A stretch of 64,000 nucleotides of DNA. Source: Amphiscolops sp. MND2022 (taxonomy: Eukaryota). The translations under genes and the position numbers were made by a program. The stretch covers positions 34,038,001 through 34,102,000 of the forward strand of contig OZ076414.1 of the NCBI GenBank assembly GCA_964187785.1, in the 5' to 3' direction. Of the stretch, positions 25,231 through 55,561 are shown in pieces. Under the pieces are notes generated by a model, which worked only from the letters and a program-made list of their open reading frames with translations, had not been told where the DNA came from and searched no databases. The first letter of the stretch is position 1. Each line of letters opens with the position of its first letter.

Positions 25231-25322
25231 AATACAATACGTGGATAAAATATCATCCTCAGCTGAAGAAGACGACTGGGATCACAACAAAATACAAAGT
25301 ATCAACAACAAGAAGAAGAAAA

Positions 25323-36905: not shown

Positions 36906-37107
36906 TTCAAGTTTTTTCGAACCTACTAAGCTCAGCCGATAGTTTATTTTTTCTATCGTTGAGTAGTGCAATGCTAACCTCCCAGTCACAACCTGTCTAA
37001 ACCGGAACCGGGTTAGCTACTCAACGGCTGAGACCCTACTAAGCCTTTTGAATTAGGACGTGGGATCTACTCCCCCTAGATTGATTGGACAGCTTAATTG
37101 CCTTTCG

Positions 37108-37686: not shown

Positions 37687-38409
37687 GTTTTCGACCTATT
37701 ATGCAATTGTACTTTTTTCCCCACCGTTCAAGAACGTTTTCTCAAAAACTGGCAGTAAAAAATGACCGAGAAAACTAGCTAAATTTAGCCCGTAAATGAC
37801 CAAAAACTGCCATTTTTAGACATTTTTGATTTTCTCAAAAACTGCCCATTCTATTCGAACCATAATTTTTACAACCATTGTGCACCGTATTACTGTCCTA
37901 TCAGTACAATGCCATCAAAAATATTTGACTGTAATTTGCGAAACATAGTCGAAATTTGTCCTAAAATAACCGAATGACTATGTAGTATACAATTTTCAAA
38001 TCAATTTTCAACTCTTTCACCGCACGTACGGTTCTGGTCCATCTCGCCTTTCTAGGAATATTCAAAACATGCATCCAAAAAGCTAAAACTTGCTTCTCCA
38101 TTACAGACTTTTAGTTTTCACTCTTCCACAGTAAAATTTGGCCTTGAAAAACAGTTGGTCGAAAATAAGATCAAAATTTGTCGACAATTTCAATTTTGGA
38201 GTGCTCGTAGTCACTCATTTCTAATGAAATATCATGGGGACGTGCACAACCATATCCCATGCGATTAGGCGTATTTTGCGCTTTAGATGAGGCCTCTAAC
38301 ACATCTCAACAGTTTTCGGTGTTCCTTTTTCTGATAACAGTTGTTATTAGTTTTCAAATGAAATGATCTCCAACTATTTATGCGCACACGTGCAGTACTG
38401 TACGATAAC

Positions 38410-40483
38410 TGTAAAGGTTCGATTGGGTTTAGGAGAAATTAGCCTTCTGAGATTCTTGATCAATAGTGTTTAGGAGTTAGTTTGCGACTATGCCTTCCTA
38501 AACCTTTACAAAAGTTGTCTCTAGGTCTTCCGAGTTCGCAGGAAGGACTTTGTTTCGAGAGAAGAGTTTGAATATATGAAAAGAATTTGAATTAGTTCGA
38601 GTATTATATTCAACAATGTTTGTTTTTACACAATACGCAAGAATACAATACAAACAGAATAATGTAATCATCCAAGTTGACACAAATATCCAATCAATAA
38701 TATCTGAATTGCTTAGCATTCACCACAAATAAATACATCAATTATTTAGGGAGCAATGTTCAGGTAAGTTGTTTAAATACTATAAAAACTGGAATTTTCT
38801 GATCTTATTGTCCAACAATTTGGTTAGGACAAGTGTGCTGACTTTTGGCCAGAATTCCAGTCTATTCAGACCGGTTTGGGGTTCCTAGAGTTCTCAACAA
38901 TGTAGTGAGAGTTACTAAGTCTATTGACAATTTACGTGAAAGGTTTGTCACACGTTCTAGCTTATAGGAAGCGAAGAACTAGCTTATAGGAAGCTGAGAG
39001 TTAAATAAAATAGTTTTAGCCTATATGACCAGCCAATTACTAGGTCGAAGACAGGGTTGTCTTGAGCATAGACTTATAAGAAGTCTTGCGAATCTAAGTA
39101 AATTAAAGGTCTTATCTAACCAGCATTCGCTAGGTTTTTGTTCGGACAAGATTGCCGATTGGGCTCGATCCAGAGGTTCGGTGCCGTGTTCTAAGAGTTT
39201 TAACCTATTGCAATGGACCAGCAAGTTTGCTAGGTCGAGAGGAAGACAAGTTTGTCTAAAGACTTTGAAGAAGTCTTGTGAGTCTAAGTGAGTTAAAAGG
39301 CCTTATTTCAACCAGCAGTTTGCTAGGTTGCTTTTTAGACAAGATTGTCAGAATTCTGTTCAATACTTTATAAGGTTACATGCATTTTACTTTTTAATCA
39401 GTTTGTTTTACTTGCAAGTTAGCTGCAGTTATTGAGATGATCTAGACTAGCAGTCGCTAAGTCTTGACGCAATCGCGTACTAAGAGGAAAGTGATCTCCG
39501 TCGAGAATTGTTTGGGAGCGTTTAGCTCTAGTTAGTTTTCCCTATGATTTTCATAGGAGAACCTTGTCGGTTGTTTGTCTCTTCAGTCACTAGGACTGGG
39601 GGTTGTCTATAAAAGACAGGTAGGAAAAGGGAGCAAAGAAAAAAGAGAAAAATTTTGAGTTGTGAATTTTGAAGTTATTTTCTAAGTTAAAGAAAATAAC
39701 TAACCTGAAGTTTGAAGCAAAGATTGGGTCGGAGAGATTTGTTCTCGCAAGAGAGAGATTTTTTGAGTGAGATGATTTATAGCAGAGGCGAAGAGGAGAG
39801 TCAGAGTGAGAGTGTGCGAGGGATTTATGCGAGAAAATTATATCTCAATTTGCTAGAGTCCGGCTTTTTATACGAGCCGACCGAACGGTACAACCAATCA
39901 AATCGATTGGCGTTTTTTATTGGATACGAAATTATTTCGTCATTATCTCGTCAATATTTTGTCCATAATTGGAATCGCATTCACTATTGGATGCAACCGA
40001 ATAGAAGTCGGCGGGGATTGCATCAGCTACCGAATATGTTCGGCTAACCGAGTTGGCTGACGCAACTCTTTGTATTTGTCAGGGGAATTAATCCTCTCAA
40101 GTGGGGGACTTTGTTCCCACTTGAGAATTCTTTTGTTTAAAATTGAGAATTTGGCCGTACAAGTGGCGCCTATTATTCTCTTTTCAGAGATATTTACTGG
40201 CACAAGTGGCGTCGCATATTGTCTTTTCAGGGGAGATAAAAGATAATTGTTTGCACAAGTGGCAAGCGTTTTCTTTCGTAGAGGGGAATTCTCCCTTTCA
40301 TATGACGCGCAGCTGTAATTTTGTTTATCTCTAAAATTCTTTCGAGCGTGCCTGGAGAATTGAAAGAATTTGAGTAAGAGTTCACAAAAATTGAATAAAA
40401 AAAATTCTAGCTCCGATTGAATAATTTTCTAAATATGTTTTTTCAAATATTAAAATGAAGAAAAAGTTGTGTTAAACATAACA
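38410..40483 (-). repeat. 3' LTR of giant element (2,074 bp)
   Basis: Direct repeat of 55562-57635, with internal duplications (16-bp ctagcttataggaagc x2; an ~190-bp-period degenerate pair). Confidence 0.96.
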
Positions 40484-40485
40484 AC

Positions 40486-41259
40486 TCACCCGGGGTTTAA
40501 GAATGATTGAGTTGAAAGGGGGGCATTCAGGGTATTTATGACTTTTACTTCGAAAAATATGGAATTGTTTTTTAGCCAGGGGTTCTCTGGGTTCATGAGT
40601 TCATCATGTGGGATGAAGCACAAGATGGTGATTGCTGTGTTGCTGGCTGTGGGAATAGGTTTCTTGAAGCACTCACTGTTATTGTTATTCGTCACAATGA
40701 GTTGTTTGTAGGGTTTGTAAATATTGCCTTGACCAAGGAGGTGTATCTCGATAACGCCTTGGAAGGGCCAAGTGAGTATCTCATCGTAGGGTCCCGGACA
40801 CATAGCCAAGCATACTGACATGTATTTCCCTTTGGCAGTGTCGATGCCATAAGGGTAAGCTCGTAGATGAAAGGTGTACCCAAAGGGTTGTGAGAAGAAG
40901 ATAGGGCTACAGACGTCTTTTAGGCTATTAGGATCACAATAGGGTGCTCTTACATGAGACAAACTTTTTTCGTATTTTTCAGCATTCTGAAAAATATCAG
41001 AAAATTGATCAAGCCTCCAAATAATTTTGTAGAGGTTCCAATCCCGTGGAATTGATTTCTTTTCGATACGAAGGACTCGCATCTCAAGTGCGTCGAGCTT
41101 TTTACTGATCTCGTGTATCATATCAGAATCAAATGTGTCATCTTTATATTGGGTGATATTGAGTTTTTGTCGAAGCAATAGTAACTCATTGATTAGGGAG
41201 TCCGTAAGGGACCTTTCATCTTCCAATTGTTCAATAAGGGTAGATGAGCTTGTGTTCAT
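40486..41259 (-). CDS. TRAF-like protein (coiled coil + TRAF-C/MATH domain, no RING or zinc fingers), 257 aa
   Basis: IIWRLDQF...SPIFFSQPFGYTFHLRAYPYG...GKYMSVCLAMCPGPYDEILTWPFQGVIEIHLLGQ...FKKP...FIPHDEL...LKNNSIFFEVKV follows the TRAF-C consensus strand by strand. Heptad-rich residues ~8-68. Confidence 0.92.
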   Translation of the reverse strand: MNTSSSTLIEQLEDERSLTDSLINELLLLRQKLNITQYKDDTFDSDMIHEISKKLDALEMRVLRIEKKSIPRDWNLYKIIWRLDQFSDIFQNAEKYEKSLSHVRAPYCDPNSLKDVCSPIFFSQPFGYTFHLRAYPYGIDTAKGKYMSVCLAMCPGPYDEILTWPFQGVIEIHLLGQGNIYKPYKQLIVTNNNNSECFKKPIPTASNTAITILCFIPHDELMNPENPWLKNNSIFFEVKVINTLNAPLSTQSFLNPG

Positions 41260-41295
41260 CTTGATAGGTCGTTCTGAAATTCAATGGAAAAGACT

Positions 41296-41805
41296 TTAAA
41301 TAAATGCTGAAATAGCTCTAATAGGTACCACAATCCTCTGGTAGCCTAGGGTCGGATTTTCCAATGTAAATTCTTGACGGTTAGAATCCCAGAATACAAT
41401 ATTCCAAGGATTATATTCGCGTTTCAAAAGATAATTTAATTCGGTCCGGAATCGTGGGTTCCTGGTGAAAATATATTTATTAGCAGCTTCCTCGTTTTTT
41501 CGTTGTTGTCGTAGTTTCTCGTGAGCCGAGAGGGAAGCTTTTTGCCTTTTATGAGAACGCTTAATGGACGTTGAATGAGGTCGTTTAGTGGGTAGGGGTG
41601 TTGTTTTTAAGTTGTTGCGCGGAGGAGGTGGTGCTGTTTCAGTAACACCTTCTGCAATAGTTTCCGTTGAGAGAAACTCTAAATCTGTTGGGGAAAGCAA
41701 GGGGAGATCAAGTAGTCCGCTGTTGTCGAGTTTTGGTTCACCTGTTAATAACTCGATTTCTTCAGCCACAGTTTTGTCGGTTTGCATATTCTGAATACTA
41801 AACAT
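41296..41805 (-). CDS. Accessory ORF-D, ~163-169 aa: acidic N-terminus, Pro-rich linker, basic NLS-like stretch, small C-terminal domain
   Basis: Long ORF on the element's coding strand between env and TRAF. The acceptor tttagtattcAG (41791) lies just before ATG 41787 (MQTDK). Confidence 0.75.
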   Translation of the reverse strand: MFSIQNMQTDKTVAEEIELLTGEPKLDNSGLLDLPLLSPTDLEFLSTETIAEGVTETAPPPPRNNLKTTPLPTKRPHSTSIKRSHKRQKASLSAHEKLRQQRKNEEAANKYIFTRNPRFRTELNYLLKREYNPWNIVFWDSNRQEFTLENPTLGYQRIVVPIRAISAFI

Positions 41806-41815
41806 AAAAATACAA

Positions 41816-43924
41816 TTACACCGGAGAAACAGTATGGGTATTCGAAGTAGGGGGCCTACTTATGGCAGGGTAAATGTGTTCGAGGGTTTCGTGCTCATTG
41901 TAATTTTTGTCTGGAGGGGTATCTGAGACCATTGGGTCATGTTGGGGAACTTGATTAAGTGTTGATATCATCGAAACTGTGAATAGATTGTAGGTTGCTG
42001 ATAGAAGTATTTTGCCAATACCCCAAGAAGCTCCTGTAACTCGGTGTAGTTCAAATGAGCGAAATGTTATAACAATCACATTGACCAAAAACTTGATAAG
42101 AAGAAATCCACCAAACCACTGTCCCAATTTGCTAAACCAGTATTCGATAATACCAAAAGTGCTGATGAACTGTTCCTTGAAATATCCTGGTGATATCATG
42201 TTATCCACATAGAAATTTGTACGTGGTGCAAAGTAACCAAATTCGTCTGGTCCTTTGTCGGCAGCTGAAGGTATAATGAGTTCTCGTGAAAACTTTTGCA
42301 AGGCATTCCTCGAAGCCGCGCTGATCAGAATATTGTCCCAAAAATCGCTGAGTTGTCCTTTTGTGTACATTCCAGCATCTTGAGACTCATCGAAAGCATC
42401 TTTTGTGAAAGGAGAAATCTCTTTCGGACCGAAGATAGCAGGTCTATCTCTATGTGTAGGCTCTGGATTTAAAGAAAACCAAGAGTCCTTGTCTTGCATA
42501 TCTAGTTGAAAAAGGTTCTTTATTCTATCTGTGCAATTTTGGGTATTTGCGTTAGGGTAGGTTTGTCTGGTGATGGGGTCTACGAATTGAATTTGTCCCT
42601 TGTAGAATATGGGTATTTTGTCATAACAATTGTTCATGACATGAAGAGGTGATGAAATCAGTGGGCATGAATAGAGCCAGGCGAGACTACCATCAGTTTC
42701 AAGGAACATGGATCTATTTCCAGTAAGCATGTATCCAGCAAGGCGTGGATTTTCCAAAGACAGCATTAAAATAGTTAGAATTTGGGTTCGTTCCTGTTCG
42801 CACTGGTTTTTCAACATTTGAATTTCGGAAGATTGCAGTGCTCGGGTGCTTTCGAAGAACAGGTAATCCAGTTTTGTTCAAACTTGCATTTCATAATCCA
42901 TGTTGAGCCAAGTATTAACGTACTTGTCTTTAACTGTGGCATCTCTGTTGTACACGTAAAGTCCAGGTTTCCCAGAATTGTCTGTGGAGTATTGGAGGGT
43001 ATAAGATCCTCTTGTTATCCCCATCTTTCTTCCGGAGGCCATGTCAAATCCACCGGTATGTATCACAATGTACATGGACTCGTAATTTGTGGGATATACG
43101 TCGTTTGGTTTGTTGCAGAATTTTTGAGGGTAGTTCTTCACTTCGAACAAAAATTTGGAGGAGGAATCGTTGGTGCTCACCATGTGATACCTGTGTTCAT
43201 TTTTTATCATATTCACATGTTCTTCTTTCAATACTGAAAGTACACAGTTATCTGGGTGATCCCAAATATAGGCGTAGGGATCCAAGGATGTGCTTTGGCA
43301 ACCCAGATCGTCAAGTTTGCATGGGAGAGGATTTCCATTTACATTGTGAACTGTTCCATCTCTCAGCTTGACGGGTAGGGTAACATCTTGAATGTGACTC
43401 TCAAAAGTATCTTTGATCATCCAAGACCTTCCAGTGCAATGGTTTCTGTTTTCTTCGCTCTTCTTTCCGTTCGTATAGGACTGAGTTAGTTTGTTTCCCT
43501 TTTTAAACTGGACCATGTGATCCAATATTTGTATCTTTCCCTCTTCTCGTGCTCTTCGACATTGTTCGGGGCTCAAATCGATATCGCTAGTTATTGTACT
43601 TTGTTCTGCATCGATACTCGCATGGTCATGATATCCACAATGCCATTTGAATCTACTGTGCTTTAGGCGGCACATAGTGGCATTGAGTTCTGTACGAAAG
43701 TGCTTCGTGTAGACAGTGATTATGGCTGGGTTGATTTCAATATTTTCTGGGGAAACGTGGCAGGGTCTCACTTGATTGAGCGCATATAATTTGTTTTCGG
43801 TCATTTCTCCACAATCATAGTGCGATACACTAAGCCTTTGTGCGATGTCATCCAGGTTTGGATTGGGGAGGCTATTGATTAGGGAGTAGCACGTAATGAA
43901 TAATATCAAAATTTTACTGCACAT
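41816..43924 (-). CDS. env: Envelope glycoprotein, chuvirus G / herpes gB-type class III fusion protein-like; 702 codons with one in-frame TGA (42878-42880)
   Basis: N-terminal signal peptide. Cys pattern YDC..., CRLKHSRFKWHCGYHDH, SPEQCRR, LPCKLDDLGC, KNQCEQER...ENPRLAGYML, CYDKIPI...DPITRQT...QNC. N-glycosylation sequons and C-terminal hydrophobic segments. The two listed ORFs are in the same frame. Confidence 0.85.
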
Positions 43925-44037
43925 TTTGGAACTAACTGGGGGAAATCTTAGGTGTTTGCCAGAGCTCAGTTTTCAGAGGGGCAAACTGTTAAGAAGAAAA
44001 AATCAAAAAGAGGAAAGTTAAACGGTAGCTTGCTAAC

Positions 44038-44189
44038 CGAGAGTTGGTGGAGTCGAATTTGACAACCAGTTAGAATCAAATTGATTCTATTGTTGAAGAA
44101 TGTTCTTCAGAAACGAGAGTTGGTGGAGTCGAATTTGACAACCAATTAGAATCAAATTGATTCTTTTGTTGAAGAATGTTCTTCAGGAA
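44038..44189. repeat. Two 76-bp direct repeats, each with two palindromes, upstream of env
   Basis: Units at 44038 and 44114; each has agaatcaa-a-ttgattct and gaagaa-tg-ttcttc. Confidence 0.9.
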
Positions 44190-44503
44190 CTGAAACGAGA
44201 CAATTATTGTCTAACGTTTTCAACCAGGGTGAACACCGAATTTGGATTTGATAGCTTGCTAACCAAAAATAGGTGTAGTCACAGTGATCACTGCTTTAGA
44301 TTTGAGATTGGTGCACAGGTCTATGGATTGAAGATTTCAGTGTCTGGCTCAATTGATAGCCGTTTTCATAAGTACTGAAAGTACACTCTGTTATCAGAAG
44401 TGAAGTTATGGAATTTGGGATTTGAAGTGAAAGTTGAGAAAGAGGATCGTAAAATTTTATTTACCAAACAAAAATTTATTTCAAAACGAAAATGAGATGA
44501 AAT

Positions 44504-44968
44504 TTACAAATCATAAAACTGGATAAGATCCTTGTACAATTTGCTATATTTAGGTGAAGTGACACACTCAATGTCCATGACACTGGTTAATTCACCTAAC
44601 ACAAGCAGATCAAATTTGGTGATGTGCCTTTCAGGTCTCTGTTCGTATGACAGGAGGGAAGCTGCTAGTGACGCGTATAGAAGGGTGTCCTTGTAGATTT
44701 GTTTCTGATACTTTTTGTCAGGCAGGTCGTAACGTTCAAAGTGAACGCAAATCTTGAATTCGTAGGTCCAAGTCCACCGAATATAGGTGATCAAAAATTG
44801 TTTGTTGTTTTCAGCAACGAAAATAGTCCAGGGGCAATTGAAACTGAGTTCTTCGTACTTTTTCTCCCAGAGGGTATCCAAGTAAATAGTAGGAGGAGGA
44901 TAAATTTGAGTAATCCTCGGTTTTGTTCTTTTGCGTGAGTCTTTTTTGAGAATAGACTGTGGGTTCAT
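44504..44968 (-). CDS. Accessory ORF-B, 154 aa from MNPQSILKK (paralog of ORF-A)
   Basis: Starts in the TAATG overlap. Followed by two AATAAA (44480-44475, 44461-44456). Motifs align with ORF-A. Confidence 0.8.
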   Translation of the reverse strand: MNPQSILKKDSRKRTKPRITQIYPPPTIYLDTLWEKKYEELSFNCPWTIFVAENNKQFLITYIRWTWTYEFKICVHFERYDLPDKKYQKQIYKDTLLYASLAASLLSYEQRPERHITKFDLLVLGELTSVMDIECVTSPKYSKLYKDLIQFYDL

Positions 44969-45186
44969 TAGAGATGGTTGTTTTCTCCTCTGAACAAATC
45001 CGAAGGTTTGTCTCCCACAAATTTCATAAGGTGGAGAAAATAGTCCCAATATACTGAATGTTGATCTACAAAAACAATATCTTTTTTCGAGGTGATGTAG
45101 TGCTTTACATAGATATAGATTCTGTCTTGATGCAGCTCAGTTCTATAGATCCGGTAGAATTCGTTTTCAATTTTGATGTAGGTCAT
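44968..45186 (-). CDS. Accessory ORF-C, 72 aa (MTYIKIENEF...), unknown function
   Basis: ATG 8 nt after the acceptor ttttgactatttcAG (45195). Its TAA overlaps the ATG of ORF-B (TAATG). Confidence 0.65.
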   Translation of the reverse strand: MTYIKIENEFYRIYRTELHQDRIYIYVKHYITSKKDIVFVDQHSVYWDYFLHLMKFVGDKPSDLFRGENNHL

Positions 45187-45214
45187 ACGACGAACTGAAA
45201 TAGTCAAAAGTTTT

Positions 45215-45642
45215 TTACCCACGGCAGAGATTGATACTATGATCGTTACCGTGCTGAAAAGTTATTTACCCACGGCAGAGATTGATACTTTGATCGTTAC
45301 CGTGCTCGTTTTTGTGAAAAATTCTTTACCCACGGCAGAGATTGATGCTATGATCGTTACCGTGCTGAAAAGTTATTTACCCACGGCAGAGATTGATGCT
45401 ATGATCGTTACCGTGCTGAAAAGTTATTTACCCACGGCAGAGATTGATGCTATGATCGTTACCGTGCTGAAAAGTTATTTACCCACGGCAGAGATTGATA
45501 CTTTGATCGTTACCGTGCTCAATTTTGTGAAAAAGTTATTTACCCACGGCAGAGATTGATACTATGATCGTTACCGTGCTCAATTTTGTGAAAAAGTTAT
45601 TTACCCACGGCAGAGATTGATACTATGATCGTTACCGTGCTC
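45215..45642. repeat. Tandem array of 8 units (51, 60 or 61 bp), each containing an imperfect inverted repeat
   Basis: Units start at 45215, 45266, 45326, 45377, 45428, 45479, 45540 and 45601; core cacggcagagattgatactatgatcgttaccgtg. Confidence 0.95.
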
Positions 45643-45748
45643 AAGAATTTCTGAAACGAAGGACTACAAATTAGTTATCAGTTTACGTTAAAATGACAAT
45701 GAAGAGAAGAGAAAAAGAATTTTGACAAGAAGACTTTTATTTACAATA

Positions 45749-46159
45749 TTAGAAATCTTCCATTTCCTGCCACAGCTTTAGAGTTTCAAGGAAATCAATG
45801 TACATATCATTGTAGCTCGAGTTTTTACAAACATTGTCCATCTGGCTAGAGATGGTGTTGAGAGCGTCGACTTCTTGTTTTGATAGCTGTGGTTCGGGTT
45901 TCCTCATGAACGTTACTAACGCCGCAGTGAGGGACACATAAAGGAATGAACCGGGTTTGACCCATTTGTGGTATTTTTGTTTGGACCGGTAGTTATGGAA
46001 TTTAACTTCTACATCAGCAGTTGGGTGCCAACTCCAACTTAGTTCTTCGATGATCATCGAGATTTCTTCTAATTCGGGCATGATATTCCAGGGGCAGCAT
46101 TTGAAATTTATTTTGTTCATAATCACAATAGGGATGTCGTACGCAATGACGGGCTTCAT
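45749..46159 (-). CDS. Accessory ORF-A, 136 aa, unknown function (paralog of ORF-B)
   Basis: ATG preceded by a tttcAG acceptor (46176), AATAAA 7 nt after the stop, and clear collinear similarity to ORF-B. Confidence 0.8.
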   Translation of the reverse strand: MKPVIAYDIPIVIMNKINFKCCPWNIMPELEEISMIIEELSWSWHPTADVEVKFHNYRSKQKYHKWVKPGSFLYVSLTAALVTFMRKPEPQLSKQEVDALNTISSQMDNVCKNSSYNDMYIDFLETLKLWQEMEDF

Positions 46160-48549
46160 CTTTGGTTGGCTTGGGCTGAAATTTGGTCAAAATAGATACT
46201 AAGGCACGAAAATGCTGCTTGACTTACTTTGTAAAATTTAAACAAATTTTACAATTGCAAGAGCTGGATTTTTCAAAAAGTAAAATTTCATACTATTGTT
46301 TTTGTTCTTTTCACAAGGTTCTCCTTTAACAAGGCTTTGTCTTGTTTTCTTTTGTTTGTCTACTTCTTTTGTTTCCTTTTGTAGTCTTTATTGAATAGAT
46401 TCTTGCATTCTTTTGTTTTCTACATGCTTTTGTTGTTACATGCAGTGGTTCCTTTTGTAAACTCCTTTCAGTTGTTGACTTTTGTTTTTCGTTTTCTATG
46501 GTTTGCATCACTGGCTTTCATCGGCTTGTTTTGTAAAGATCGCGCTTTTGTTGTTGGATAACGGCGGGTGCCATATGTGTTTTTGAAGTAGAGTGTTGAA
46601 GTTAGCTTTGTATTGAATGCGCTTTTGTTATGGTTCAGTTCTTTTGGTGCCATGTGTTTTCGAGTGGTTTGAAAAGTTGTTTGTTCACAATGTGCTTTTG
46701 TAATGGTTCAATTCTATGGACGCCATGTGTGTTTTTGAAGTGGTGGCCCAAATTCGGTTTGTGTTGAATGCGCTTTTGGATGTTAGTCTGATCTCTTCAC
46801 ATTTACAAGTAAGTTCGGTTTTCATTTTCAACTTTTGCTTTTTCTTGAATTTTTGGTAACGTGTATATGACACGCTCGACCGCCGAAAAAGAAGTAGAGA
46901 AAAAGGTTTGAGCCATATGGTGGTGAAGATTGGAGAGAAAGAAATGAAAGAAAAGCAATTTTGAAGAACGGAGTGGAAAATGGGGGAAATTTTTAAACGG
47001 CATAAGGGGGGTGGTGAAAACGAAATTTGAGGTTGTAATTTAGTTGCGTTTCTTTAGGCTGTTTTAGTACACGATGAACCGTTTGCCATTTTCTACCGCG
47101 GATGATGCTTATCTGGCACCAGATCTTTTTGCGGATATGCGATTATTGGTGACTGATTTGGAACTACCAATGATGGCGGGGACGACAGCGGTGGGCGAGG
47201 TGTTGCGACGCCCAGAACCACTCCGGAGAGCAGTGAGATTGGCGTTAGGCGAGCACGTAAGTTGTTGAGTGGTGTAACTTGTGAAGCTAAGACATTGTGG
47301 AGAAGAGATTTTGAATTAGTTCTTAGCACTAAGAGTAAAAAGGAAATGGAAAGTATTGTCTTTAGCTTCGATTGTAAAAGTTCTGTAGTTGCAGTTTCTA
47401 AGTACGATAAGGTAAACAGAGACGGAAATGTTTGTGAAATTAATGTTTTTGTGTATTGATTGCAGTTTGTTTTAGTGGAGATCGAAGCTACAGTCCGGAG
47501 CCAAGGACGTTTGGATTTTTAAACTAAAAGCCATTGTACGGGGGTGGGAGATGACTGCTCCACAAGATCGGCCGGACATAGCCCGACGGCTGGATCGGAG
47601 TCAGTTTTTTCAAGTGCTGCAGGACTTGGCGGAGTTGGGGGGATATATGGTGTGCCTCTGCGCGGGGCATCCTAAGCCGCCTCCAAATGGGGCGACTGTT
47701 GTCCCTTCCGAAAGGGAAGATTTATTATAAACTTGTATATATTGTAAATATTTTGTTTTTGTTATTTTAATATTTTAATTTTATTTTGTAATACTTTTGT
47801 TTTAAATTTGAGTTTTTAAGTTGTAGGGTGAAAAGTAAGAGAACGGTTTTTGACGGTTATAAATTCGAAAAGTTTAGCTGGAGGAGAAGGATTAGCTAAA
47901 ACTTTGAGCAATCGCCTCTGTGGGGGCTTGTTGATTAAAACATCAACAGTCACAGTGCTATCTATTCCAGGCAATTCGACCATTTAAGGCGAACCGCCAT
48001 AGCACAATTTTTCTTTGTGGTTTTTGTCTCTTGAGAAGACTTGTTGAAGAAAACCGTCAACAATCACAGTGGCATCTATTCCAAGCAGTTCAACCATTTA
48101 AGGTGAACCGCCGTACCACAAAATTTTTGTTGTCAGAGTGGGTAGTGATCCGATTTAGAATTTTCGCAAAAAATCTCGGGATTCAGTAAGGTGTACTAAA
48201 AGGGTATACCAGTGAAGTGTAGGTTATTGCTAATTGTCTCGTAATAGTTTTGTGGTTGTTGTATCCAATGGGTCATTGTGGAGCAACTTTGTTTGTAACT
48301 ACGTAAGAAAAAAAATTGAAGTTTTTTGAAAGGGAAACTCTTTTTGTTGTGTCTCAAGACGAAAAATGTTTAGGAGTGTGTTCGGAGGCTTCCTGGTGAG
48401 TCTCATTACACGGTGAAGTGTGTTTAGTTCCGTACTATACAAGTTTCAAGTTGTGACGATGAGGAAGTAGTTCGCGCTTATGTACGGAACTGAGAATTGA
48501 GAGGTGTAGAAAAATGTGACATCTTGTTATTGTTATTTTTATTTTGATT

Positions 48550-51500
48550 TTAATCTTTATAACCTTTCCGTTCTATATCCCTGAGAGAACTACCAGGGGT
48601 GCTTCGTTCGTATTTGGGGTCTTTGGGTTTTTCGGAAAACCGTGTAGATACTTTCTTTTTGAAGTTTGATAACTTTCCTGTTTTTGGGGAAATTTGGTCG
48701 GGGGGAGGCACTGTGTGGATAGGAGGGACGGATGGGAGAACCGGCGTTCTCTTTGGTAGGGGAGTGTTAGAAGAGAAAGCGAGCGGCAAAACTGCCATTG
48801 GGAGGCGTGGTGTTTGCATAGGTGGGAGTGGGTTTGTTTTACAACTTTGAGGGGTACGTTCCCCTGGAGCGGTGTTGCTAGAAGTAGATGGGATCGGGGT
48901 GTGAAATTGTGGTGTTTTCGGGGAAAGGAATCCAGAATCAGTACTGGGGGAAAATTCTGAACCTTTAGAAGTATTGTTACTCGGTCCTGAAAGGGGGGTT
49001 ATGATAAGTGGCATAAAATCTAGTTTATGCTCAGGTTGTCCCGAGTTGTGTTTGTCAATTTGAGTTTGGATCAAATGCTTGTAAAAATTATCGTCCTGTT
49101 CTACGGGAGCGTAATTTGTCAGCAATGGGGGTAAAGTTTCCTCTTTGGGAAAATACTCTAGTAAGTGGTTTCGGTGAGTTACTTTAACATTTTCGGGGTT
49201 CTCATCTTCTTTAATCTCGTATGTGGTATTGGTTATTTGTTTTGTTACCGTGAAAGGTCCCACTCGTAATTGTTTCAATTTCTGTGATTTGGATAGGTCG
49301 GGTTTGTGATTCTCCAATAGGACTTTTTGACCAACCGCGAGCGGTCGTCCTAGTTTGAAACGGTTCCGATACTCATGAGCTTTCGATGTGATTTCTCTAC
49401 ATCTTTTGTAGGTAGATGAGTATATTGATTTGAAATCGTTTTCTCTTGTAAGTAGTTCGGAAGATAACTGTGGTCTAAGGAGTCGGTCGAGGGACTTGTT
49501 TCTGAGGTTATTCTCACTATGGGTGTGGGGTTGTAAATCTGCACAAAATTCTGATTTACATTGTTTGTTTTTGTCGCGAAATAGCCCAAGTTTCAAAGTC
49601 ATCGGTATCTGAGGTTTGACGCCGAAGACAATCTCGTAGGGGGTCATACCCGTTGTGTAATTTACACTTGTGTTATGGGCAAAAGCGAATTTAGATGCAA
49701 GTGTTGACCAGTTGTTTCCTGACTCATTGGTGAAATTCCTCCAGTATCTCATGAGGTGTTTGTTTTGGACTTCAACTTTGCCATTTGTCCAGGGCGAATA
49801 AGCAGTGCGCGGTGCCAGCGTTATTCCGAACTCTTTGGTCCAATTTACAAAATCACGGTTGATAAACGCTGAGCCATTGTCGTGGACGATTTTTTGGGGA
49901 ATGCCGTAGGATGTGATCCATTTTTCTAGGGCATTGATTGTAGTCTGGGCTCCTGTATCTCGGACCGGATAGACTCCAAGAAATCTTGAGAATGCATCTA
50001 CTACAACTAGACAATGTGTATTCAGGTTACTGCTTGGTCTGATGGGACCTTTGTGGTCGATATGGATTGTTTTGAAGGGGGTTGTCTCGAGTTCGCCCCA
50101 TTGTTCAAGAGGAGCTTCTTGTAGATCGTGTCGTTTAGACTTGTTAGTCTGGCATTGTAGACAATCTTCTATCAGGGATACTATCCACTTATATCGTCCA
50201 GGCCAAAAGAAGTTTTGTCTGATGTTTTCGAATGTTTTAAATATGCCTGGGTGGCCACTGTGAGTATGAGCGTGGGCCAGATTAAAGAGGGGTAGGAATA
50301 ATGATAAGGGGACACAGATTTTCATTTCGTATTTGTCCGTTCCATGAATAGGTTCGTTATAGCAGAGTAGGTTGCTTTCTTTATCGAGAAAAAGTTGGTT
50401 GAAATTGTTGAAGTACGATAGCAAAGCCTTCGATTGGTGGATCTCTGGTGTTTTGGTGTTCGGCTTGTTCTTGTTTCTAACCCAAGCTCGTACAATTTGT
50501 AATACAGGATCGTTGATTTGTTCTGCAACTAAGGTGGTGATGTCCAAATCAGCGGTTTTAGAGTAATCGCTGAGTTTTTGTAAGAGGTCTTTGGTATCAA
50601 CGTGTGGGAATTGCTCGACATCTAAATTCTTGTTCAATAGAGGCCTTTCACTTTTCTGTGAAATGTTCTTTTCTTTCGCAGTTGATTTATCGCGATAGAA
50701 CTCGTGGTCTTCGCTGGAAAGGTGAAGTTCGGCGACTTCCTCTTCATCGTCACTGGAATCGGTTTCGATGTCGTCAATTCTACTATACTCGGGTTCATAC
50801 TGTATTTTGTATGAGGGTAGACAGAGGTTTTTGTATTGATTGATGGATTTTCCCAGTTTGAAACAGTCAGCGATGTCTTGGCGAGTCGCCATTACTGTTT
50901 GTTGGTTCTCATAGTGTTCTACTTCATGTTCTTCTCCGTCATTCTTGAGATGGAGTAGCCTTTGATCTTTGCCTTTTTGGCAGAGGATAGGGAAAAAGTC
51001 ATTGCTGCCACAATGACCATCGTCATTATGCTCGATTGCATAGTGTATTTTCGATCCAAATTCATCATAGAAACTGATATCTCGCGGTATCTCTTTGTGT
51101 AGTTTTTGTAAGTTTTTGGTTTCTTCCAGCGTGACATTTCTACTAAGTATGTCTGGAAATGCGAGGTTGGATCCTTTAGTCCAGATGATTTTGAGGTTTT
51201 GGAACTTGGTGATGATTACCTGATACTTGAAAAAGCGATGTGAAAGCTGTCCTTTTCTTCCCCAGAGGTATAAAATAGGTTTGTGATCGCAATAGAGGTA
51301 TATTGGAAATGGAGATCCAATAATGTAGTGTTCGTATGTTTGGAGTGCTGATACTATGCCACACAATTCGCGATGAAGGGTGGACATCTTTTGTTCAGCT
51401 TTGTCAAATACGCGGGAATTGAAAGAAACTATCCTTTTTCCTTCTGGAAATTGTTGAACTAGTATACAACCAGTACCAACGTTCGAAGAATCGACGTGTA

Positions 51501-52570
51501 TGTGGAAGGGGTACTCAGTTGAAGGGACAGCAAGAATAGTGTCCTCACATATACGACTTTTTATATCAGTGAAGAGGTCTTCGTGTTCTTTCGTCCATTT
51601 GAAAGGCGTTGTAGCTTTTATCAAATCGTAGAAGGGCTGGCTATCCACGTGTAAGTTTTTGATATAGCAACTGTAAAATCCAAGACAGCAAAGTACTTTC
51701 ATCACATCTCTTTTACTTTCGGGTGATTTTAAGTTTTTTAGATCCTGTACTCTTTTTGCTAAGGGTTGTATTCCTTGTTCAGAAATAACATGTCCTAGGA
51801 ATTTGACTTTCCTGATGAAGAAATTCGTCTTCTCAGGTGCAGCTTTAAGTCCGGCTTTCCTCAGGAGCTGATGGTACTCATGAATTATCGTGAACATTTC
51901 TTGTTTGGTCTGAGCCTGCATAAGACTGTCATCAAGATAGGTGATAGCTTGTTTTCGCTTGATGAGGGGCTCAAAATGTATAGCCATGAGACGGCTAAAA
52001 AAGTTTGGAAGTCCACAGAGTCCGTAGAAACCGCGTACATACGTGTATTGTTTTCCGCCGATAATAAAACTAGTGAGTTTTTGGGTCTCGTCGCTCAAAG
52101 GTACTTGGTGATATGCGCAGGATAAATCGCTGACCGTGAAGTACTTTCCGTTAATTCGAGTCATAATCATCTGAATGGGTTCCAATGGCCACGAGTAATT
52201 TGTCAGATCTGTTATGGAGTTTAAGTAGCGGGCGTCGATTACTAACTTTACGTAGTCTGCTTTGGGCATCAGAATGATCGGATTGACAAAAAGGGAACCT
52301 AGTTCGTCATCGTCTCCCATTTCTCTAATGATATCGGCTTCTTGGATTCGTCCAAGTAACTTCTCAAGTTTGTCCTTCAAGTGAAGGGGTACTTTGCTTG
52401 GTCGTTGTTTCTTGAGTTCTGAATTGGCTTTGAGTGTTACGTGAAATTTTTGACGTACTTTTCCCACGTCAAATTTGTGTTGTGAGTACACGTCCGCTGA
52501 GTCAATAAGCATGTCTATCAAGACAACCAATTCTTCATCTTCGAGGTCAGTATATCGGAAATCGAATTTC
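48550..52570 (-). CDS. pol: Pol part 2: RT, RNase H, linker insert, integrase (HHCC, DDE, GPF), Pro/Ser/Thr-rich tail
   Basis: YLDD at 51939-51928. RNase H: VDSS, ELCG, CDH, PD. IN: HAHTHSGH...CLQC, IDHKGP, HDNG, GKVE, VGPF. Joined to part 1 by a -1 shift near 52570. Confidence 0.95.
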
Positions 52571-54137
52571 TTTCATATTCCTTGATTTCCTCAGGCTGAT
52601 ATTGGAGATAGTAATCAATTAGTGCGTCATTGTCTTCTTTTGCTCTAAGCTCGACAAATTGTTCTGTACAGGGTGGCTGACACGATTTAGCATCCGTAGC
52701 AAAATTTGTTTCAAGTTCTTCAGTACCATTAGCAAATTGTTCTGTATAATAGTCAATATCTCCTTCTTCTACTTCTTCTTTTCGTATGGAAGCGTTAACA
52801 AATTGGAGGTTCGGTTCGTTTCGTGATACGATCTCGACTTTAATATGTCCATAATCGAAGCTGTTACGGATTATGTCCAAAGCTCCTTTCCAGTGAATGT
52901 TATCTAAGCCATCTTCAATTTTGGGTATTGAAATTGCAGGTATATTGTTTAGTTGTGCGTGTCCAACCAAATTTTCGATGCAACTGCGAAAATCTTCGGG
53001 TTTAATTTTTTCGTAACATCTCTTTTTTGCAACTAGTCCATAGATGAAGCGACTGGCTTCGTTATCCCAAAAGGGTAAAACTGATCCGACGAAAGGTTTC
53101 GACTGGTTCACGAAATTCTGAAAATCTTTCTTCTGTTCGCACAACCTTTTTGCGAACGTGGTTGTCATTTTTCCATCTGCTGAGACACAAAAGGCTAGAT
53201 TTGCATTTGAGGCTCGAAGGGTCTCGCCGGAGCCGTGGCTTAGAAAAACTTGTTGATCTCCTTCGTGTTCGAAGGGAACTGTTGAGTGTAGCAAGAAACA
53301 GTCGTTGTAGTCTGGGTTTTCCTTTAAAATTGTGTTGACCATCGTGACGCAATCCTTTATCTGGAACTTTGGTCGTTCTTTTTCCTGTAGGTCTATGATA
53401 GCATGACCAATTATTCCTCTATTAAGGGTTATTTGGTGATTTCGATTATTTTCAATCAAAATTGGCAGGTGGGATTCGGACTTCGTACATAAAACATTCA
53501 CAAAGGTAAGTCCTGTTTTGACTGCATTTTTGTGGGGTGTGAATGATGTTCCGGGTGCAAAATGTCTGTTATTTTCGCGGGAGTACTTGTGTAGGCGGGT
53601 AGTTTTGGCATCGATGCAAATTGGGTTATCTGTTCGTATTGTTTCGACCTTTGAAACGTATGGGAAAGGTTTGGTAGCACAAAGGTTACCGTAGCAAATC
53701 GTGTTAGGACTGTCTTTCAATTCGATTGCAGGCAAATCAAAATGTAATTTAGAAACAAGTTGACGGCAGAAATCTATTCCCAGTAAATTGGGTGTCTTCG
53801 CTTCTGTTATCCAAAACTTTAGCTCTACAGGATGGAGTCCATCCGAGTCGAAACTGAATGTGATTGTTGTTGATCCAAACATCGGTATAACTTCACCAGT
53901 ATAGGTTTTAGTCAGTTGTTTGCTCCTGACTACCGTGATGGGTTGTCCAAACTGTGCAATTTCCTCAAAAGCTCTGTAATTGATGATTGAACAGGCTGCT
54001 CCTGTATCTAGCATGAATTCTATTTCTAACCCACTATCTTTTTTGGAGTCTCCGGTGGGAAAAAAGAAGAGATTTAGGTGAAAACGTGATTTGAGGTTAC
54101 TTTCTTCGTCAGGTCGCGGAGACTTTAGCAGTTTAAA
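52518..54137 (-). CDS. pol: Pol part 1: aspartic protease, dUTPase-like remnant and TARG1/Poa1p-like macrodomain
   Basis: MLDTGA...LLGIDF protease. Macro region 52827-53249 (AFCVSADGKM...FIYGLVAKKR...ISIPKIEDGLDNIHW). Confidence 0.88.
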   Translation of the reverse strand, partial: FKLLKSPRPDEESNLKSRFHLNLFFFPTGDSKKDSGLEIEFMLDTGAACSIINYRAFEEIAQFGQPITVVRSKQLTKTYTGEVIPMFGSTTITFSFDSDGLHPVELKFWITEAKTPNLLGIDFCRQLVSKLHFDLPAIELKDSPNTICYGNLCATKPFPYVSKVETIRTDNPICIDAKTTRLHKYSRENNRHFAPGTSFTPHKNAVKTGLTFVNVLCTKSESHLPILIENNRNHQITLNRGIIGHAIIDLQEKERPKFQIKDCVTMVNTILKENPDYNDCFLLHSTVPFEHEGDQQVFLSHGSGETLRASNANLAFCVSADGKMTTTFAKRLCEQKKDFQNFVNQSKPFVGSVLPFWDNEASRFIYGLVAKKRCYEKIKPEDFRSCIENLVGHAQLNNIPAISIPKIEDGLDNIHWKGALDIIRNSFDYGHIKVEIVSRNEPNLQFVNASIRKEEVEEGDIDYYTEQFANGTEELETNFATDAKSCQPPCTEQFVELRAKEDNDALIDYYLQYQPEEIKEYERNSISDILTSKMKNWLS

Positions 54138-55519: not shown

Positions 55520-55540
55520 TCTTCTCTTTTGCTTGAATGT

Positions 55541-55558
55541 GCCTCACTGGTCGCACCA
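55541..55558 (-). promoter_or_regulatory. Primer binding site of giant element
   Basis: TGGTGCGACCAGTGAGGC, 3 nt after the LTR. The implied tRNA 3' end GCCUCAC-UGGUCGC-A-CCA has a T-arm like elongator tRNA-Met or tRNA-Ile(UAU); this assignment is inference. Confidence 0.8.
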
Positions 55559-55561
55559 GTT

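What the first reader, a model, noticed from the sequence alone, without database searches (positions are those of the whole stretch)
40486..41259. Retrotransposon-encoded RING-less TRAF: candidate decoy of innate immune or death-receptor signalling
The ORF is an intact, intronless coiled coil + TRAF-C (MATH) domain. It keeps the R-x-Y of the receptor-peptide groove (LRAY, compare TRAF2 LRIY). It lacks the RING and zinc fingers needed for ubiquitin ligase signalling, the architecture of TRAF1 and of dominant-negative TRAF constructs. A viral TRAF homologue is known in a fish iridovirus (ISKNV ORF111L), but I know of none in an LTR retrotransposon. Inference: a host TRAF mRNA was captured and is used to dampen TNFR/Toll-NF-kB or apoptosis responses.
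Basis: partly seen in the sequence, partly recalled or inferred. Interest (0 to 1): 0.93.

Follow-up and report, generated by a model that had tools for sequence, protein, structure and literature searches.

The report
Retrovirus-like element carrying a TRAF gene
A 19-kb retrovirus-like mobile element in this window carries, as its last gene, a stripped-down copy of a cellular immune-signalling adaptor (a TRAF). Related elements from marine invertebrates, stony corals probably among them, have kept this gene under strong selection, so it is likely a working accessory gene that touches host immune or cell-death signalling.

Summary
Window 40486-41259 on the minus strand is an open 257-aa ORF: two N-terminal helices (the second a clean heptad coiled coil) followed by a TRAF-C/MATH domain (Pfam E 8e-22; PDB TRAF1/2/3/4/5; Foldseek prob 1.0). 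It has no RING and no zinc finger.

It is the last gene of a complete 19,226-bp Ty3/Gypsy-type element (38410-57635). The LTRs are 2,074 bp and 99.8% identical, with a 4-bp target duplication. Gene order is gag, PR-RT-RH-IN, two paralogous small ORFs, a class-III env (PF24664), a 169-aa ORF-X, then TRAF.

It is not a passenger:
- The env / ORF-X / TRAF order recurs in five further lineages from five other samples, with TRAF identity falling to 34-36%.
- Most copies are full length.
- dN/dS is 0.06-0.14 (Fisher p below 1e-34).
- 449 related clusters exist, all RING-less. Every relative whose neighbourhood I could read, but one, sits next to this env or inside such an element.
- One relative lies in a Cyphastrea coral metagenome.

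The capture was therefore ancient, probably from a TRAF1/2/3/5-type (TRAF3-like) gene, and not recent from this host. The decoy function is plausible but untested. The TRAF2 Arg is kept, the Tyr is usually Phe, and the serine triad is absent. I found no report of a TRAF gene in a retroelement.

The parts
38410..57635 (-). Complete LTR retroelement of Ty3/Gypsy type carrying env; 19,226 bp
   Evidence: Two 2,074-bp direct repeats with 4 mismatches. TG..CA ends. 4-bp target duplication. Gene order gag, PR-RT-RH-IN, env.
38406..38409 (.). Target-site duplication, left copy (TAAC on the + strand)
   Evidence: Identical 4-mer on both flanks; 3-mers and 5-mers do not match.
57636..57639 (.). Target-site duplication, right copy
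38410..40483 (-). 3' LTR
55562..57635 (-). 5' LTR
55540..55561 (-). Primer-binding-site region: a TGG-initiated stretch 3 nt after the 5' LTR
   Evidence: Sequence read. The matching tRNA was not identified.
54125..55519 (-). gag, 464 aa, open
   Evidence: Retrotrans_gag at E 3.5e-4 (weak, below the cut-off). A CCHC zinc knuckle is visible in the translation. 47-66% identical to gag in L002, L009 and L018.
48550..54014 (-). pol (protease motif, RT, RNase H, integrase). Broken in this copy by one frameshift.
   Evidence: Pfam RVT_1, RT_RNaseH_2, Integrase_H2C2, rve, Integrase_p58_C. A D-T-G-A protease motif is in the translation. A sibling copy, P0218, has one 1,821-aa ORF at 99% identity.
45749..46159 (-). 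Accessory ORF, 136 aa; paralogue of the 181-aa ORF
   Evidence: BLASTP 29% identity, E 2e-15. No Pfam or NCBIfam hit.
45206..45644 (.). Tandem repeat array (51-61-bp units, about 8 copies) between the two paralogous ORFs
44504..45049 (-). Accessory ORF, 181 aa, conserved in related lineages
   Evidence: 33-38% identical to the 133-aa ORFs of L002, L005 and L007 and to an ORF upstream of gag in L018.
41816..43924 (-). env, a class-III-type viral fusion glycoprotein. Broken in this copy by one in-frame stop.
   Evidence: PF24664 Monjiviricetes_fusion, E 1e-13 and 1e-22 on the two pieces. Intact 702-705-aa homologues in L001, L002, L003 and L005. Both pieces are in the same frame.
41296..41805 (-). 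ORF-X, 169 aa: acidic or low-complexity N-terminus, a basic patch, and a strongly conserved C-terminal half. No known homologue.
   Evidence: 43 invariant columns across five lineages. No Pfam, NCBIfam or PDB match.
40486..41259 (-). The finding: a RING-less, zinc-finger-less TRAF-domain protein, 257 aa, the last gene before the 3' LTR
41059..41256 (-). N-terminal helical / coiled-coil part of the TRAF protein (residues 2-67)
   Evidence: AlphaFold2 helices at 2-38 and 45-67. Heptad a/d positions 48, 51, 55, 58, 62 and 65 are hydrophobic at all six in 12 of 13 family members; one has Thr at position 48.
40531..41031 (-). TRAF-C / MATH beta-sandwich (residues 77-243)
   Evidence: Pfam matches 80-240. 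pLDDT 80-94. Foldseek matches to TRAF domains.

Best explanation
SHOWN. The ORF is a conserved accessory gene of an env-carrying Ty3/Gypsy endogenous-retrovirus-like element. It encodes only the TRAF domain (coiled coil plus TRAF-C) of a TRAF1/2/3/5-type adaptor, with no RING and no zinc fingers. It always occupies the last position, between env (usually with ORF-X) and the 3' LTR. This holds in at least six element lineages from marine samples, one of them in a Cyphastrea stony-coral metagenome. It has evolved under strong purifying selection while diverging to about 35% identity, faster than env or pol.

INFERRED. A cellular TRAF gene, closest to TRAF3-like genes among the canonical relatives recovered, was captured once and long ago. 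Its ubiquitin-ligase half was lost at or after capture. The product probably oligomerises through its heptad coiled coil, as TRAFs do. It would then occupy TRAF partners (receptor or adaptor tails, or host TRAFs in mixed oligomers) without being able to signal onward. In cells that express the element this would change TRAF-dependent NF-kB, JNK or cell-death signalling, most likely damping it, as RING-deleted TRAFs do (established knowledge of TRAF2 truncations and TRAF1). The ligand is probably not a classical TRAF2-type motif, because the serine triad of that groove is absent.
For: Domain identity.

Inside the element.

Conserved position:
- L001: sibling copy at 99% identity, env 702 aa, ORF-X 169 aa, TRAF 250 aa.
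- L003: 59% identity.
- L002, L005, L006, L007: 36% identity.
- L009: 40% identity.
- L017, Cyphastrea metagenome Ga0126343: env C-terminus, ORF-X and TRAF N-terminus, 84-87% identical to the 36% group.
- L018: a full element with 99.8%-identical LTRs whose last gene is a 459-aa TRAF-C protein.
- L013-L016: env followed by a 404-aa TRAF-C protein on TARA and other marine scaffolds.

Selection: pairwise dN/dS is 0.055-0.14 at dS 0.34-1.4. For example, 44 nonsynonymous changes over 591 sites against 97 synonymous changes over 153 sites, Fisher p 7e-47.

Intactness: 13 of 15, 11 of 15 and 13 of 15 listed cluster members are full length or nearly so. The clusters hold 61, 85 and 20 members, and one identical protein occurs on 16 contigs.

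Breadth: 449 clusters at E 1e-5 or better; the 120 listed carry only MATH domains and all come from ENA. Of 106 new clusters, 83 are long forms homologous over more than 300 aa to the L018 gene.

Phylogeny: the short forms are monophyletic. All RING-less forms make a 35-tip clade. The next canonical relatives carry RING and/or TRAF zinc fingers, and one of them (P0206) is TRAF3-like.

Coiled coil.
Against: - No expression, binding or signalling data exist.
- Groove residues are only partly TRAF2-like. Arg is kept in 15 of 17 short forms, the aromatic position is mostly Phe, and the serine-triad and Ser467 equivalents are not Ser.
- The only characterised viral TRAF induces apoptosis (PMC3352826), so the direction of any effect is open.
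- Trimer formation was not modelled; the tool predicts monomers only.
- The host of this window was not identified.
- The neighbour-joining tree has no support values. The database holds mainly intronless ORF calls, so true host TRAFs are under-represented and the donor cannot be named.
- Loci were fetched through intact TRAF proteins, so 'TRAF open while pol and env are broken' in L006 and L007 is ascertainment-biased.
- This particular copy has a broken pol and a broken env.
Confidence: 0.5

Rival explanations
1. Activator or killer rather than decoy. The protein engages a death-domain adaptor or another partner and triggers caspase-dependent cell death or signalling, as reported for the megalocytivirus TRAF. 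This could help particles leave the cell or pass to neighbouring or germline cells.
For: The best viral fold matches are megalocytivirus TRAF-like proteins (E 3e-12 and 2e-11). ISKNV ORF111L binds TRADD and induces caspase-8 apoptosis (PMC3352826). The element carries an env whose tail motifs are conserved, which fits cell-to-cell spread.
Against: Fold similarity does not show shared function or origin. Sequence identity to the iridoviral proteins is about 21-22%. Nothing here bears on TRADD-type partners.
Confidence: 0.15
2. A function within the element itself. The trimeric TRAF domain binds a short motif in the element's own proteins, for example the cytoplasmic tails of the trimeric class-III Env, Gag or ORF-X. 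It would then act in assembly, Env trafficking or control of fusion, with no role in host immunity.
For: TRAF is always linked to this env type: and the fragment P0180. The env tail keeps an invariant Y-P and a C-terminal P-(V/I) in all six lineages, inside a tail motif that varies little. In L002, an internally deleted derivative keeps gag, env, ORF-X and TRAF.
Against: The tail motif looks like an ordinary tyrosine-based sorting signal. I found no TRAF-type binding motif conserved in the tail. No complex could be modelled. Linkage to env is equally expected for any 3' accessory gene expressed from subgenomic RNA.
Confidence: 0.15
3. A gene that now serves the host. TRAF copies retained from decayed elements would work as host immune modulators or as blocks to superinfection.
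For: In L006 and L007 the TRAF ORF is open although pol and env are broken and ORF-X is not called as a gene. In this window, too, pol and env are broken while TRAF is open.
Against: The gene is multi-copy, with 20-85 near-identical members per cluster and many subfamilies. It sits inside young elements with 99.8%-identical LTRs. It co-diverges with env and pol. Loci were fetched via intact TRAFs, which biases this comparison. A 0.77-kb ORF survives by chance far longer than a 5.5-kb pol.
Confidence: 0.05
4. A neutral passenger: a transduced host fragment with no function, or an ORF that only happens to lie next to the insertion.
For: None beyond the general fact that retroelements sometimes transduce host sequence.
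Against: The ORF lies inside the LTR pair and target duplication. Its position is conserved in six lineages. dN/dS is 0.06-0.14 with p below 1e-34. Most listed copies are full length.
Confidence: 0.02

Closest known systems
TRAF1 and RING-deleted TRAF2/3 (cellular TRAF family, TRAF1/2/3/5 group)
   Same: Coiled coil followed by a TRAF-C beta-sandwich. Best PDB sequence and fold matches. No RING, as in TRAF1. Arg133 aligns with TRAF2 Arg393.
   Different: No zinc finger at all. Only about 21-24% identity to solved TRAF domains. The serine triad and Ser467 equivalents are replaced, and the Tyr395 equivalent is usually Phe. Encoded by a mobile element in many copies.
Megalocytivirus (fish iridovirus) TRAF-like proteins, e.g. 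ISKNV ORF111L; also MATH/TRAF-like proteins of klosneuvirus-type giant viruses
   Same: Virus-borne TRAF-domain proteins. They are the best matches in the viral structure library (E 3e-12 and 2e-11). They are candidate manipulators of TNF-receptor-type signalling (PMC3352826).
   Different: Those are in large DNA viruses of fish or protists, this one is in a reverse-transcribing element. Identity is about 21-22%. No evidence of common descent from one capture. No member of that group came back in the sequence searches.
Env-carrying Ty3/gypsy elements of non-insect metazoans ('ancient errantiviruses', PMC13524379) and Gypsy or BEL/Pao elements with chuvirus-like glycoproteins (Anakin, PMC7642597; PMC10084718)
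   Same: LTR element with gag, pol and a class-III-type fusion glycoprotein gene. Multi-copy, with young copies. Such elements are reported in cnidarians and other marine phyla.
   Different: Those descriptions deal with three genes. TRAF and MATH do not occur in those texts. This element is 19 kb and has at least four further ORFs, of which TRAF is one.
Host-derived accessory genes of complex vertebrate retroviruses (e.g. the retroviral cyclin of fish epsilonretroviruses; my own knowledge, not tested here)
   Same: A cellular regulatory gene kept for long periods in a 3' accessory position of a replication-competent retroelement lineage. It does not replace viral genes, unlike acutely transduced oncogenes.
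   Different: A different gene family and host range. That comparison rests on memory only.

Membership tests
TRAF family (TRAF domain proteins) | C-terminal TRAF-C / MATH eight-stranded beta-sandwich | tested here: met
   Pfam PF21355 at 7.8e-22 and PF22486 at 8.2e-22. PDB TRAF1-5 hits. Foldseek probability 1.0, target-normalised TM 0.65-0.78. pLDDT 80-94.
TRAF family (TRAF domain proteins) | Coiled coil (TRAF-N) directly before TRAF-C | tested here: met
   Predicted helix 45-67 ends 10 residues before the first strand. Six a/d heptad positions are hydrophobic at all six in 12 of 13 relatives; one has Thr at position 48. The HMMER alignment to TRAF1 extends into this helix.
TRAF family (TRAF domain proteins) | Formation of mushroom-shaped trimers | not testable with these tools
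   Only monomer prediction was available.
Canonical signalling TRAFs (TRAF2-6) | N-terminal RING and TRAF-type zinc fingers | tested here: not met
   No RING or zf-TRAF hit in the window protein or in any short or long form scanned. The precomputed Pfam for the 120 listed clusters shows MATH only. Long forms have a median of 2 Cys in their first 250 residues. Canonical outgroups P0205-P0207 do show these domains.
TRAF1/2/3/5-type receptor-peptide groove | Residues matching TRAF2 Arg393, Tyr395, Asp399, Ser453-455 and Ser467 | tested here: not met
   Mapped through the HMMER alignment to 1ca9 and column shares. Arg is kept in 15 of 17 short forms. The Tyr position is Phe in 13 of 17 and Tyr in 3 of 17, including this copy. 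The Asp position is Cys or Ile, with Asp one residue later in some. The triad is Thr/Ser, Pro/Glu, Cys. The Ser467 position is Cys or Ile.
Ty3/Gypsy (Metaviridae) LTR retroelement | LTRs with TG..CA ends, short target duplication, PBS after the 5' LTR, and the order gag, protease, RT, RNase H, integrase | tested here: met
   In this copy pol has one frameshift. An intact sibling pol exists.
Env-carrying (errantivirus-like) Gypsy elements | Viral fusion glycoprotein gene downstream of pol | tested here: met
   PF24664 on both pieces. One in-frame stop in this copy. Intact 702-729-aa env in L001, L002, L003, L005 and L018.
Megalocytivirus vTRAF (ISKNV ORF111L type) | Shared descent and TRADD binding | not testable with these tools
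   Only fold similarity was seen. No sequence-level hit. Binding cannot be tested here.
Acutely transduced host gene (oncogene-type capture) | Recent capture, high identity to a host gene, replaces viral genes, confined to one defective lineage | tested here: not met
   Present in six lineages at 34-59% identity. It sits alongside a full gene set. The nearest canonical TRAFs are distant.

The most novel reading that the evidence does not exclude
A large and old clade of envelope-bearing endogenous retroviruses of marine invertebrates, corals probably included, behaves like 'complex retroviruses'. Its accessory-gene set would include a TRAF-domain mimic acting on the host's TNF-receptor/TLR-TRAF axis. 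That would be the first host-signalling adaptor mimic found in a reverse-transcribing element. Related RING-less TRAFs in a gene-dense contig that looks like a large DNA virus hint that different virus classes of these hosts converge on, or exchange, the same module. A bolder variant is that the trimeric TRAF docks on the trimeric Env tail, so that Env acts as a virus-made 'receptor' wired to host TRAF signalling.
Probability: 0.35. Interest if true: 0.85.

Novelty: new variant of a known kind. Interest (0 to 1): 0.74.

Why it matters
Virus-encoded TRAF homologues have been known only from a few large DNA viruses. Host-derived accessory genes in retroelements are known mainly from vertebrate complex retroviruses. 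Here a RING-less TRAF is a long-kept, strongly selected gene of a widespread, recently active group of env-carrying Gypsy elements, probably including elements of reef-building corals.

Lineage-specific expansions of TRAF3 homologues have been reported in stony corals (PMC5730576), and TNF-type death signalling is discussed in coral stress biology. A multi-copy genomic source of a TRAF-domain protein could therefore matter for interpreting coral immune and stress transcriptomes. For example, 'TRAF' reads may derive from elements.

The finding also gives a concrete, sequence-defined candidate for how endogenous retroviruses of invertebrates deal with innate immunity. Finally, it shows that these elements carry more genes (ORF-X and a duplicated small ORF) than the three-gene picture used so far.

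Tried and rejected
Host identification failed for the window itself:
- No Rfam family was found in 64 kb.
- No telomere-type repeats; CpG observed/expected is about 0.9.
- Only transposon ORFs flank the element.
- No relative carries a source name or accession.
- Of the sample accessions searched in the literature, only the JGI Cyphastrea project was found.

Other searches and models:
- The IMG/VR viral-contig scan found nothing.
- The first AlphaFold run, with 13 sequences, was poor (pLDDT 62). It was replaced by a 35-sequence run.
- ORF-X and the two small ORFs have no Pfam, NCBIfam or PDB relatives.
- I looked for a TRAF-type binding motif in the env tail and found none conserved.
- DNA of the 404-aa TARA form is identical in four samples, so it gives no information on selection.
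- dS between the main clades is saturated, so only within-clade dN/dS is quoted.

Explanations rejected:
- Neutral passenger, and an ORF outside the element: see the rival explanations.
- A read-through fusion of ORF-X and TRAF as a general mechanism. The two ORFs share a frame here but not in the 36% clade (coordinates).

Slips, disclosed as required:
1. My first notebook entry and the printed output give the bounds of the two pol reading frames. That was partly before I knew they were one gene split by a frameshift, and it implicitly shows where the break lies. The ORF lists do the same for env. I have not repeated these places in this report.

Consensus lines printed by the alignment tools were not used.
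Full report
1. THE OBSERVATION

The interval 40486-41259 has no open frame on the plus strand. On the minus strand it is a 257-codon ATG-initiated ORF.

Pfam finds only the TRAF/meprin MATH domain (PF21355 at 7.8e-22, PF22486 at 8.2e-22) over residues 80-240. Sequence search of the PDB returns only TRAF domains. TRAF1, TRAF5, TRAF2 and TRAF3 score 1e-12 to 1e-10, TRAF4 1e-7 and TRAF6 1e-4. A profile of the family gives the same picture.

A first AlphaFold2 model from 13 sequences was weak, with pLDDT 62. A second model from 35 sequences reached pLDDT 76 and pTM 0.69, with 80-94 in the sandwich. It has helices at residues 2-38 and 45-67, followed by eight strands. Foldseek places it with the TRAF domains of TRAF1/4/3/5/2 at E about 1e-12, probability 1.0, target-normalised TM 0.65-0.78 and about 3 Å rmsd over the sandwich.

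The second helix has a clean 3-4-3-4-3 hydrophobic spacing at residues 48, 51, 55, 58, 62 and 65. These positions are hydrophobic at all six in 12 of 13 relatives; one has Thr at position 48. There is no RING and no zinc finger. Only the strand needed stating.

2. THE SURROUNDINGS

The ORF is the last gene of a complete LTR element on the minus strand, 38410-57635, 19,226 bp.
- The LTRs are 2,074 bp with 4 mismatches.
- They start TG and end CA.
- They are flanked by a 4-bp duplication.
- A TGG-initiated primer-binding region follows the 5' LTR.

The gene order is as follows.
- gag, with a CCHC knuckle.
- pol, with a D-T-G-A protease motif, RT, RNase H and integrase domains typical of Ty3/Gypsy.
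- Two small ORFs that are paralogues of each other (29% identity, E 2e-15), separated by a tandem array.
- env, matching Pfam's Monjiviricetes fusion glycoprotein family.
- A 169-aa ORF-X with no known relative.
- The TRAF ORF, whose stop codon lies 2 nt before the 3' LTR.

This copy is young but not intact. pol carries one frameshift and env one in-frame stop. gag, the small ORFs, ORF-X and TRAF are open. Intact sibling genes exist elsewhere.

The rest of the window is transposon debris: Gypsy fragments at about 24.6-28.5 kb, a Copia-type element at about 32.5-37 kb and an RT fragment at 16 kb.

3. IS THE TRAF GENE PART OF THE ELEMENT'S BIOLOGY?

The protein has relatives of the same size at 99%, 59%, 40% and 36% identity. 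Every one whose neighbourhood I could read has the same arrangement.
- L001: env 702 aa, ORF-X 169 aa, TRAF 250 aa.
- L003: 702, 162 and 251 aa.
- L002 and L005: 705, 152 and 248/252 aa.
- L009: env, then 162 and 238 aa, followed by an LTR and gag.
- L017: a 1.1-kb contig with the env C-terminus, ORF-X and the TRAF N-terminus.

L017 belongs to JGI project Ga0126343. A preprint identifies this as the metagenome of the stony coral Cyphastrea sp. 2 (10.1101/391565). L017 is 84-87% identical to the 36% clade.

Two more distant lineages carry longer versions.
- L018 is a full element with 99.8%-identical LTRs, about 65% pol identity to the window, and a 729-aa env. Its last gene is a 459-aa protein with a C-terminal TRAF-C, ending 41 nt before the 3' LTR.
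- L013-L016, from TARA Oceans and other marine metagenomes, have the same env type followed by a 404-aa TRAF-C protein.

A profile search then found 449 protein clusters at E 1e-5 or better. The 120 listed carry only MATH domains, and many are multi-copy. Of the 106 new clusters, 83 are long forms homologous over more than 300 residues to the L018 gene.

Divergence of TRAF follows that of env and pol: the 59% lineage is closest, then the 40% and 36% lineages, then L018. This fits inheritance with the element and not repeated capture.

4. SELECTION

Within the 36% clade, pairwise Nei-Gojobori dN/dS is 0.055-0.14 at dS 0.34-1.4. One pair has 44 nonsynonymous differences over 591 sites against 97 synonymous over 153 sites. 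Fisher p values are 1e-34 to 7e-47. Between the main clades dS is saturated.

TRAF changes faster at the protein level than env. Nonsynonymous p-distance is 0.41 against 0.27 between the window clade and the 36% clade. That rate is common for genes at a host interface, but it also fits lower constraint.

In the three clusters examined (61, 85 and 20 members), 13, 11 and 13 of the 15 listed members are full length or nearly so. One identical protein sits on 16 contigs. The gene caller only reports ORFs, so badly decayed copies are invisible. Fragments of 149-188 aa do exist.

5. ORIGIN

In a neighbour-joining tree of 206 TRAF-C domains, the short forms make one clade of 17 tips. Together with the long forms and a few other RING-less proteins they make a clade of 35. 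The next relatives are canonical proteins with RING and/or TRAF zinc fingers. One of them, P0206, is closest to TRAF3 in the PDB (2.4e-52, against 2e-46 for TRAF2).

The tree has no support values. The database under-represents intron-containing host genes. The statement 'one old capture of a TRAF1/2/3/5-type, perhaps TRAF3-like, gene' is therefore an inference.

One member of the 35-tip clade, P0101, is not in a retroelement. It sits in a dense, intronless array with HSP70, kinases, a BIR-plus-RING protein and two further MATH proteins, on a 193-kb contig seen in three sources. That array looks like a large DNA virus or a very compact genome.

6. THE BINDING GROOVE

I mapped the family on TRAF2 through the HMMER alignment to PDB entry 1ca9 and tabulated column shares.

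| TRAF2 residue | Window residue | Short forms (17) | Long or viral-like forms (18) |
|---|---|---|---|
| Arg393 | R133 | Arg in 15 | Arg in 9, otherwise mostly Lys or Gln |
| Tyr395 | Y135 | Phe in 13, Tyr in 3 | Tyr in 16 |
| Asp399 | I139 | Cys or Ile; Asp one residue later in 5 | Asp one residue later in 12 |
| Ser453-455 | S195, E196, C197 | Thr/Ser, Pro/Glu, Cys | variable |
| Ser467 | I210 | Cys or Ile | mostly Val or Leu |

Several of these positions are strongly conserved within the short forms, for example Cys197, Phe198 and Asn207. The groove therefore seems to be used, but its specificity cannot be read off from TRAF2.

7. MECHANISM

Shown:
- a TRAF domain without the ligase half;
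- a conserved heptad coiled coil;
- a conserved 3' position beside env;
- strong purifying selection;
- many young copies.

Inferred: the protein oligomerises and competes for partners of host TRAFs, or mixes with them, and so alters TRAF-dependent signalling. From what is established for RING-deleted TRAF2 and for TRAF1, damping is the most likely direction. I give the whole chain 0.5.

Rivals:
- An activating or death-inducing role like the megalocytivirus protein (0.15).
- A role inside the element, for example docking on the trimeric Env tail, whose tail motif is conserved in all lineages (0.15).
- Host co-option of decayed copies (0.05).
- A neutral passenger (0.02).

How the ORF is translated is unknown. 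The gaps between env, ORF-X and TRAF are only 2-39 nt. This suggests subgenomic spliced RNAs or re-initiation. Neither was tested.

8. COMPARISON WITH WHAT IS KNOWN

Env-carrying Ty3/gypsy elements with class-III fusogens are described across invertebrate phyla including Cnidaria (PMC13524379). Capture of chuvirus-type glycoproteins is described for mosquito BEL/Pao and insect Gypsy elements (PMC7642597, PMC10084718). None of these texts contains 'TRAF' or 'MATH'.

Full-text searches for TRAF or MATH domains in LTR retrotransposons returned nothing relevant.

In the viral structure library the best matches are megalocytivirus TRAF-like proteins and giant-virus MATH proteins. No retroviral or metaviral protein appears.

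The finding is thus a new variant of two known things: virus-borne TRAF homologues, and host-derived accessory genes of complex retroelements.

9. LIMITS

- The host of this window is not identified. 'Coral' is supported for one related lineage only.
- There are no expression or interaction data.
- The tree lacks support values.
- dN/dS rests on four loci of one clade.
- The loci were ascertained through intact proteins.

Two slips are disclosed under 'tried and rejected'.

Noticed in passing
window 41296-41805 (-); L001 9455-9964; L002 9540-9998; L003 2241-2729; L009 992-1480: ORF-X, a 152-169-aa gene always between env and the short-form TRAF. It has a variable acidic N-terminus, a basic patch and a C-terminal half with 43 invariant columns across five lineages. 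No Pfam, NCBIfam or PDB relative. It may be a regulatory or export factor of the element.
   Followed up: partly
window 45749-46159 (-), 44504-45049 (-), 45206-45644: Two paralogous small ORFs (29% identity, E 2e-15) flank a 51-61-bp tandem array of about 8 copies. The 181-aa one has 33-38% relatives in the other lineages. In L018 the relative lies upstream of gag rather than downstream of pol.
   Followed up: partly
L010 / L011 / L012 (JGI 3300022206, ENA ERZ27296364 193-kb contig, Logan SRR7132589): The RING-less TRAF relative P0101 lies in a gene-dense, intronless array with HSP70, two kinases, a MAM protein, a BIR-plus-RING (IAP-like) protein and two further MATH proteins. This looks like a large DNA virus or a very compact eukaryotic genome carrying several TRAF-like genes.
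   Followed up: partly
L002 1805-4552: A 915-aa ORF that matches gag at its start and the pol C-terminus at its end. It is an internally deleted, non-autonomous derivative that still keeps env, ORF-X and TRAF. Its TRAF cluster has 85 members.
   Followed up: partly
L002 versus L005: Mosaic divergence. The TRAF genes differ at dS 0.34, but env (dS 0.05) and ORF-X (dS 0.02) are almost identical. This suggests recombination between subfamilies at the 3' end.
   Followed up: no
window 41816-42118 (-) and env C-termini of L002, L003, L009, L013, L018: The Env cytoplasmic tail keeps a tyrosine-based H-I-Y-P-x-(I/M) motif, with Y-P invariant in all six lineages, and ends in (S/P)-P-(V/I). This looks like sorting and PDZ-type signals.
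   Followed up: partly
L009 (ERZ25067548, 3x coverage): TRAF is followed after about 1.7 kb by gag, protease and pol on the same strand. This is a tandem or LTR-sharing arrangement of two elements.
   Followed up: no
P0180 cluster (47 members, about 265 aa): A multi-copy protein with a faint match to the N-terminus of the env family, followed by a MATH domain. It may be a deletion derivative fusing the start of env to TRAF.
   Followed up: no
P0065, P0067, P0069, P0072, P0074 and others: Proteins with 5-13 tandem TRAF-C domains (up to 3,052 aa in one uninterrupted ORF) are among the best profile hits. Their origin is unknown.
   Followed up: no
window 24613-28510 (+), 32534-36989 (-), 16078-16734 (+): Other transposon remains: Gypsy-type RT/RNase H/integrase pieces, a Copia-type element (gag, integrase, RVT_2) and an RT fragment. 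No host gene was recognised in the 64 kb, and no Rfam family.
   Followed up: partly
window 40486-40506 (-): This copy's TRAF ORF is 7 codons longer than its siblings (257 versus 250 aa). It reads on to 2 nt before the LTR. Some members of the 36% clade likewise read on towards or into the LTR (P0012, P0018).
   Followed up: no
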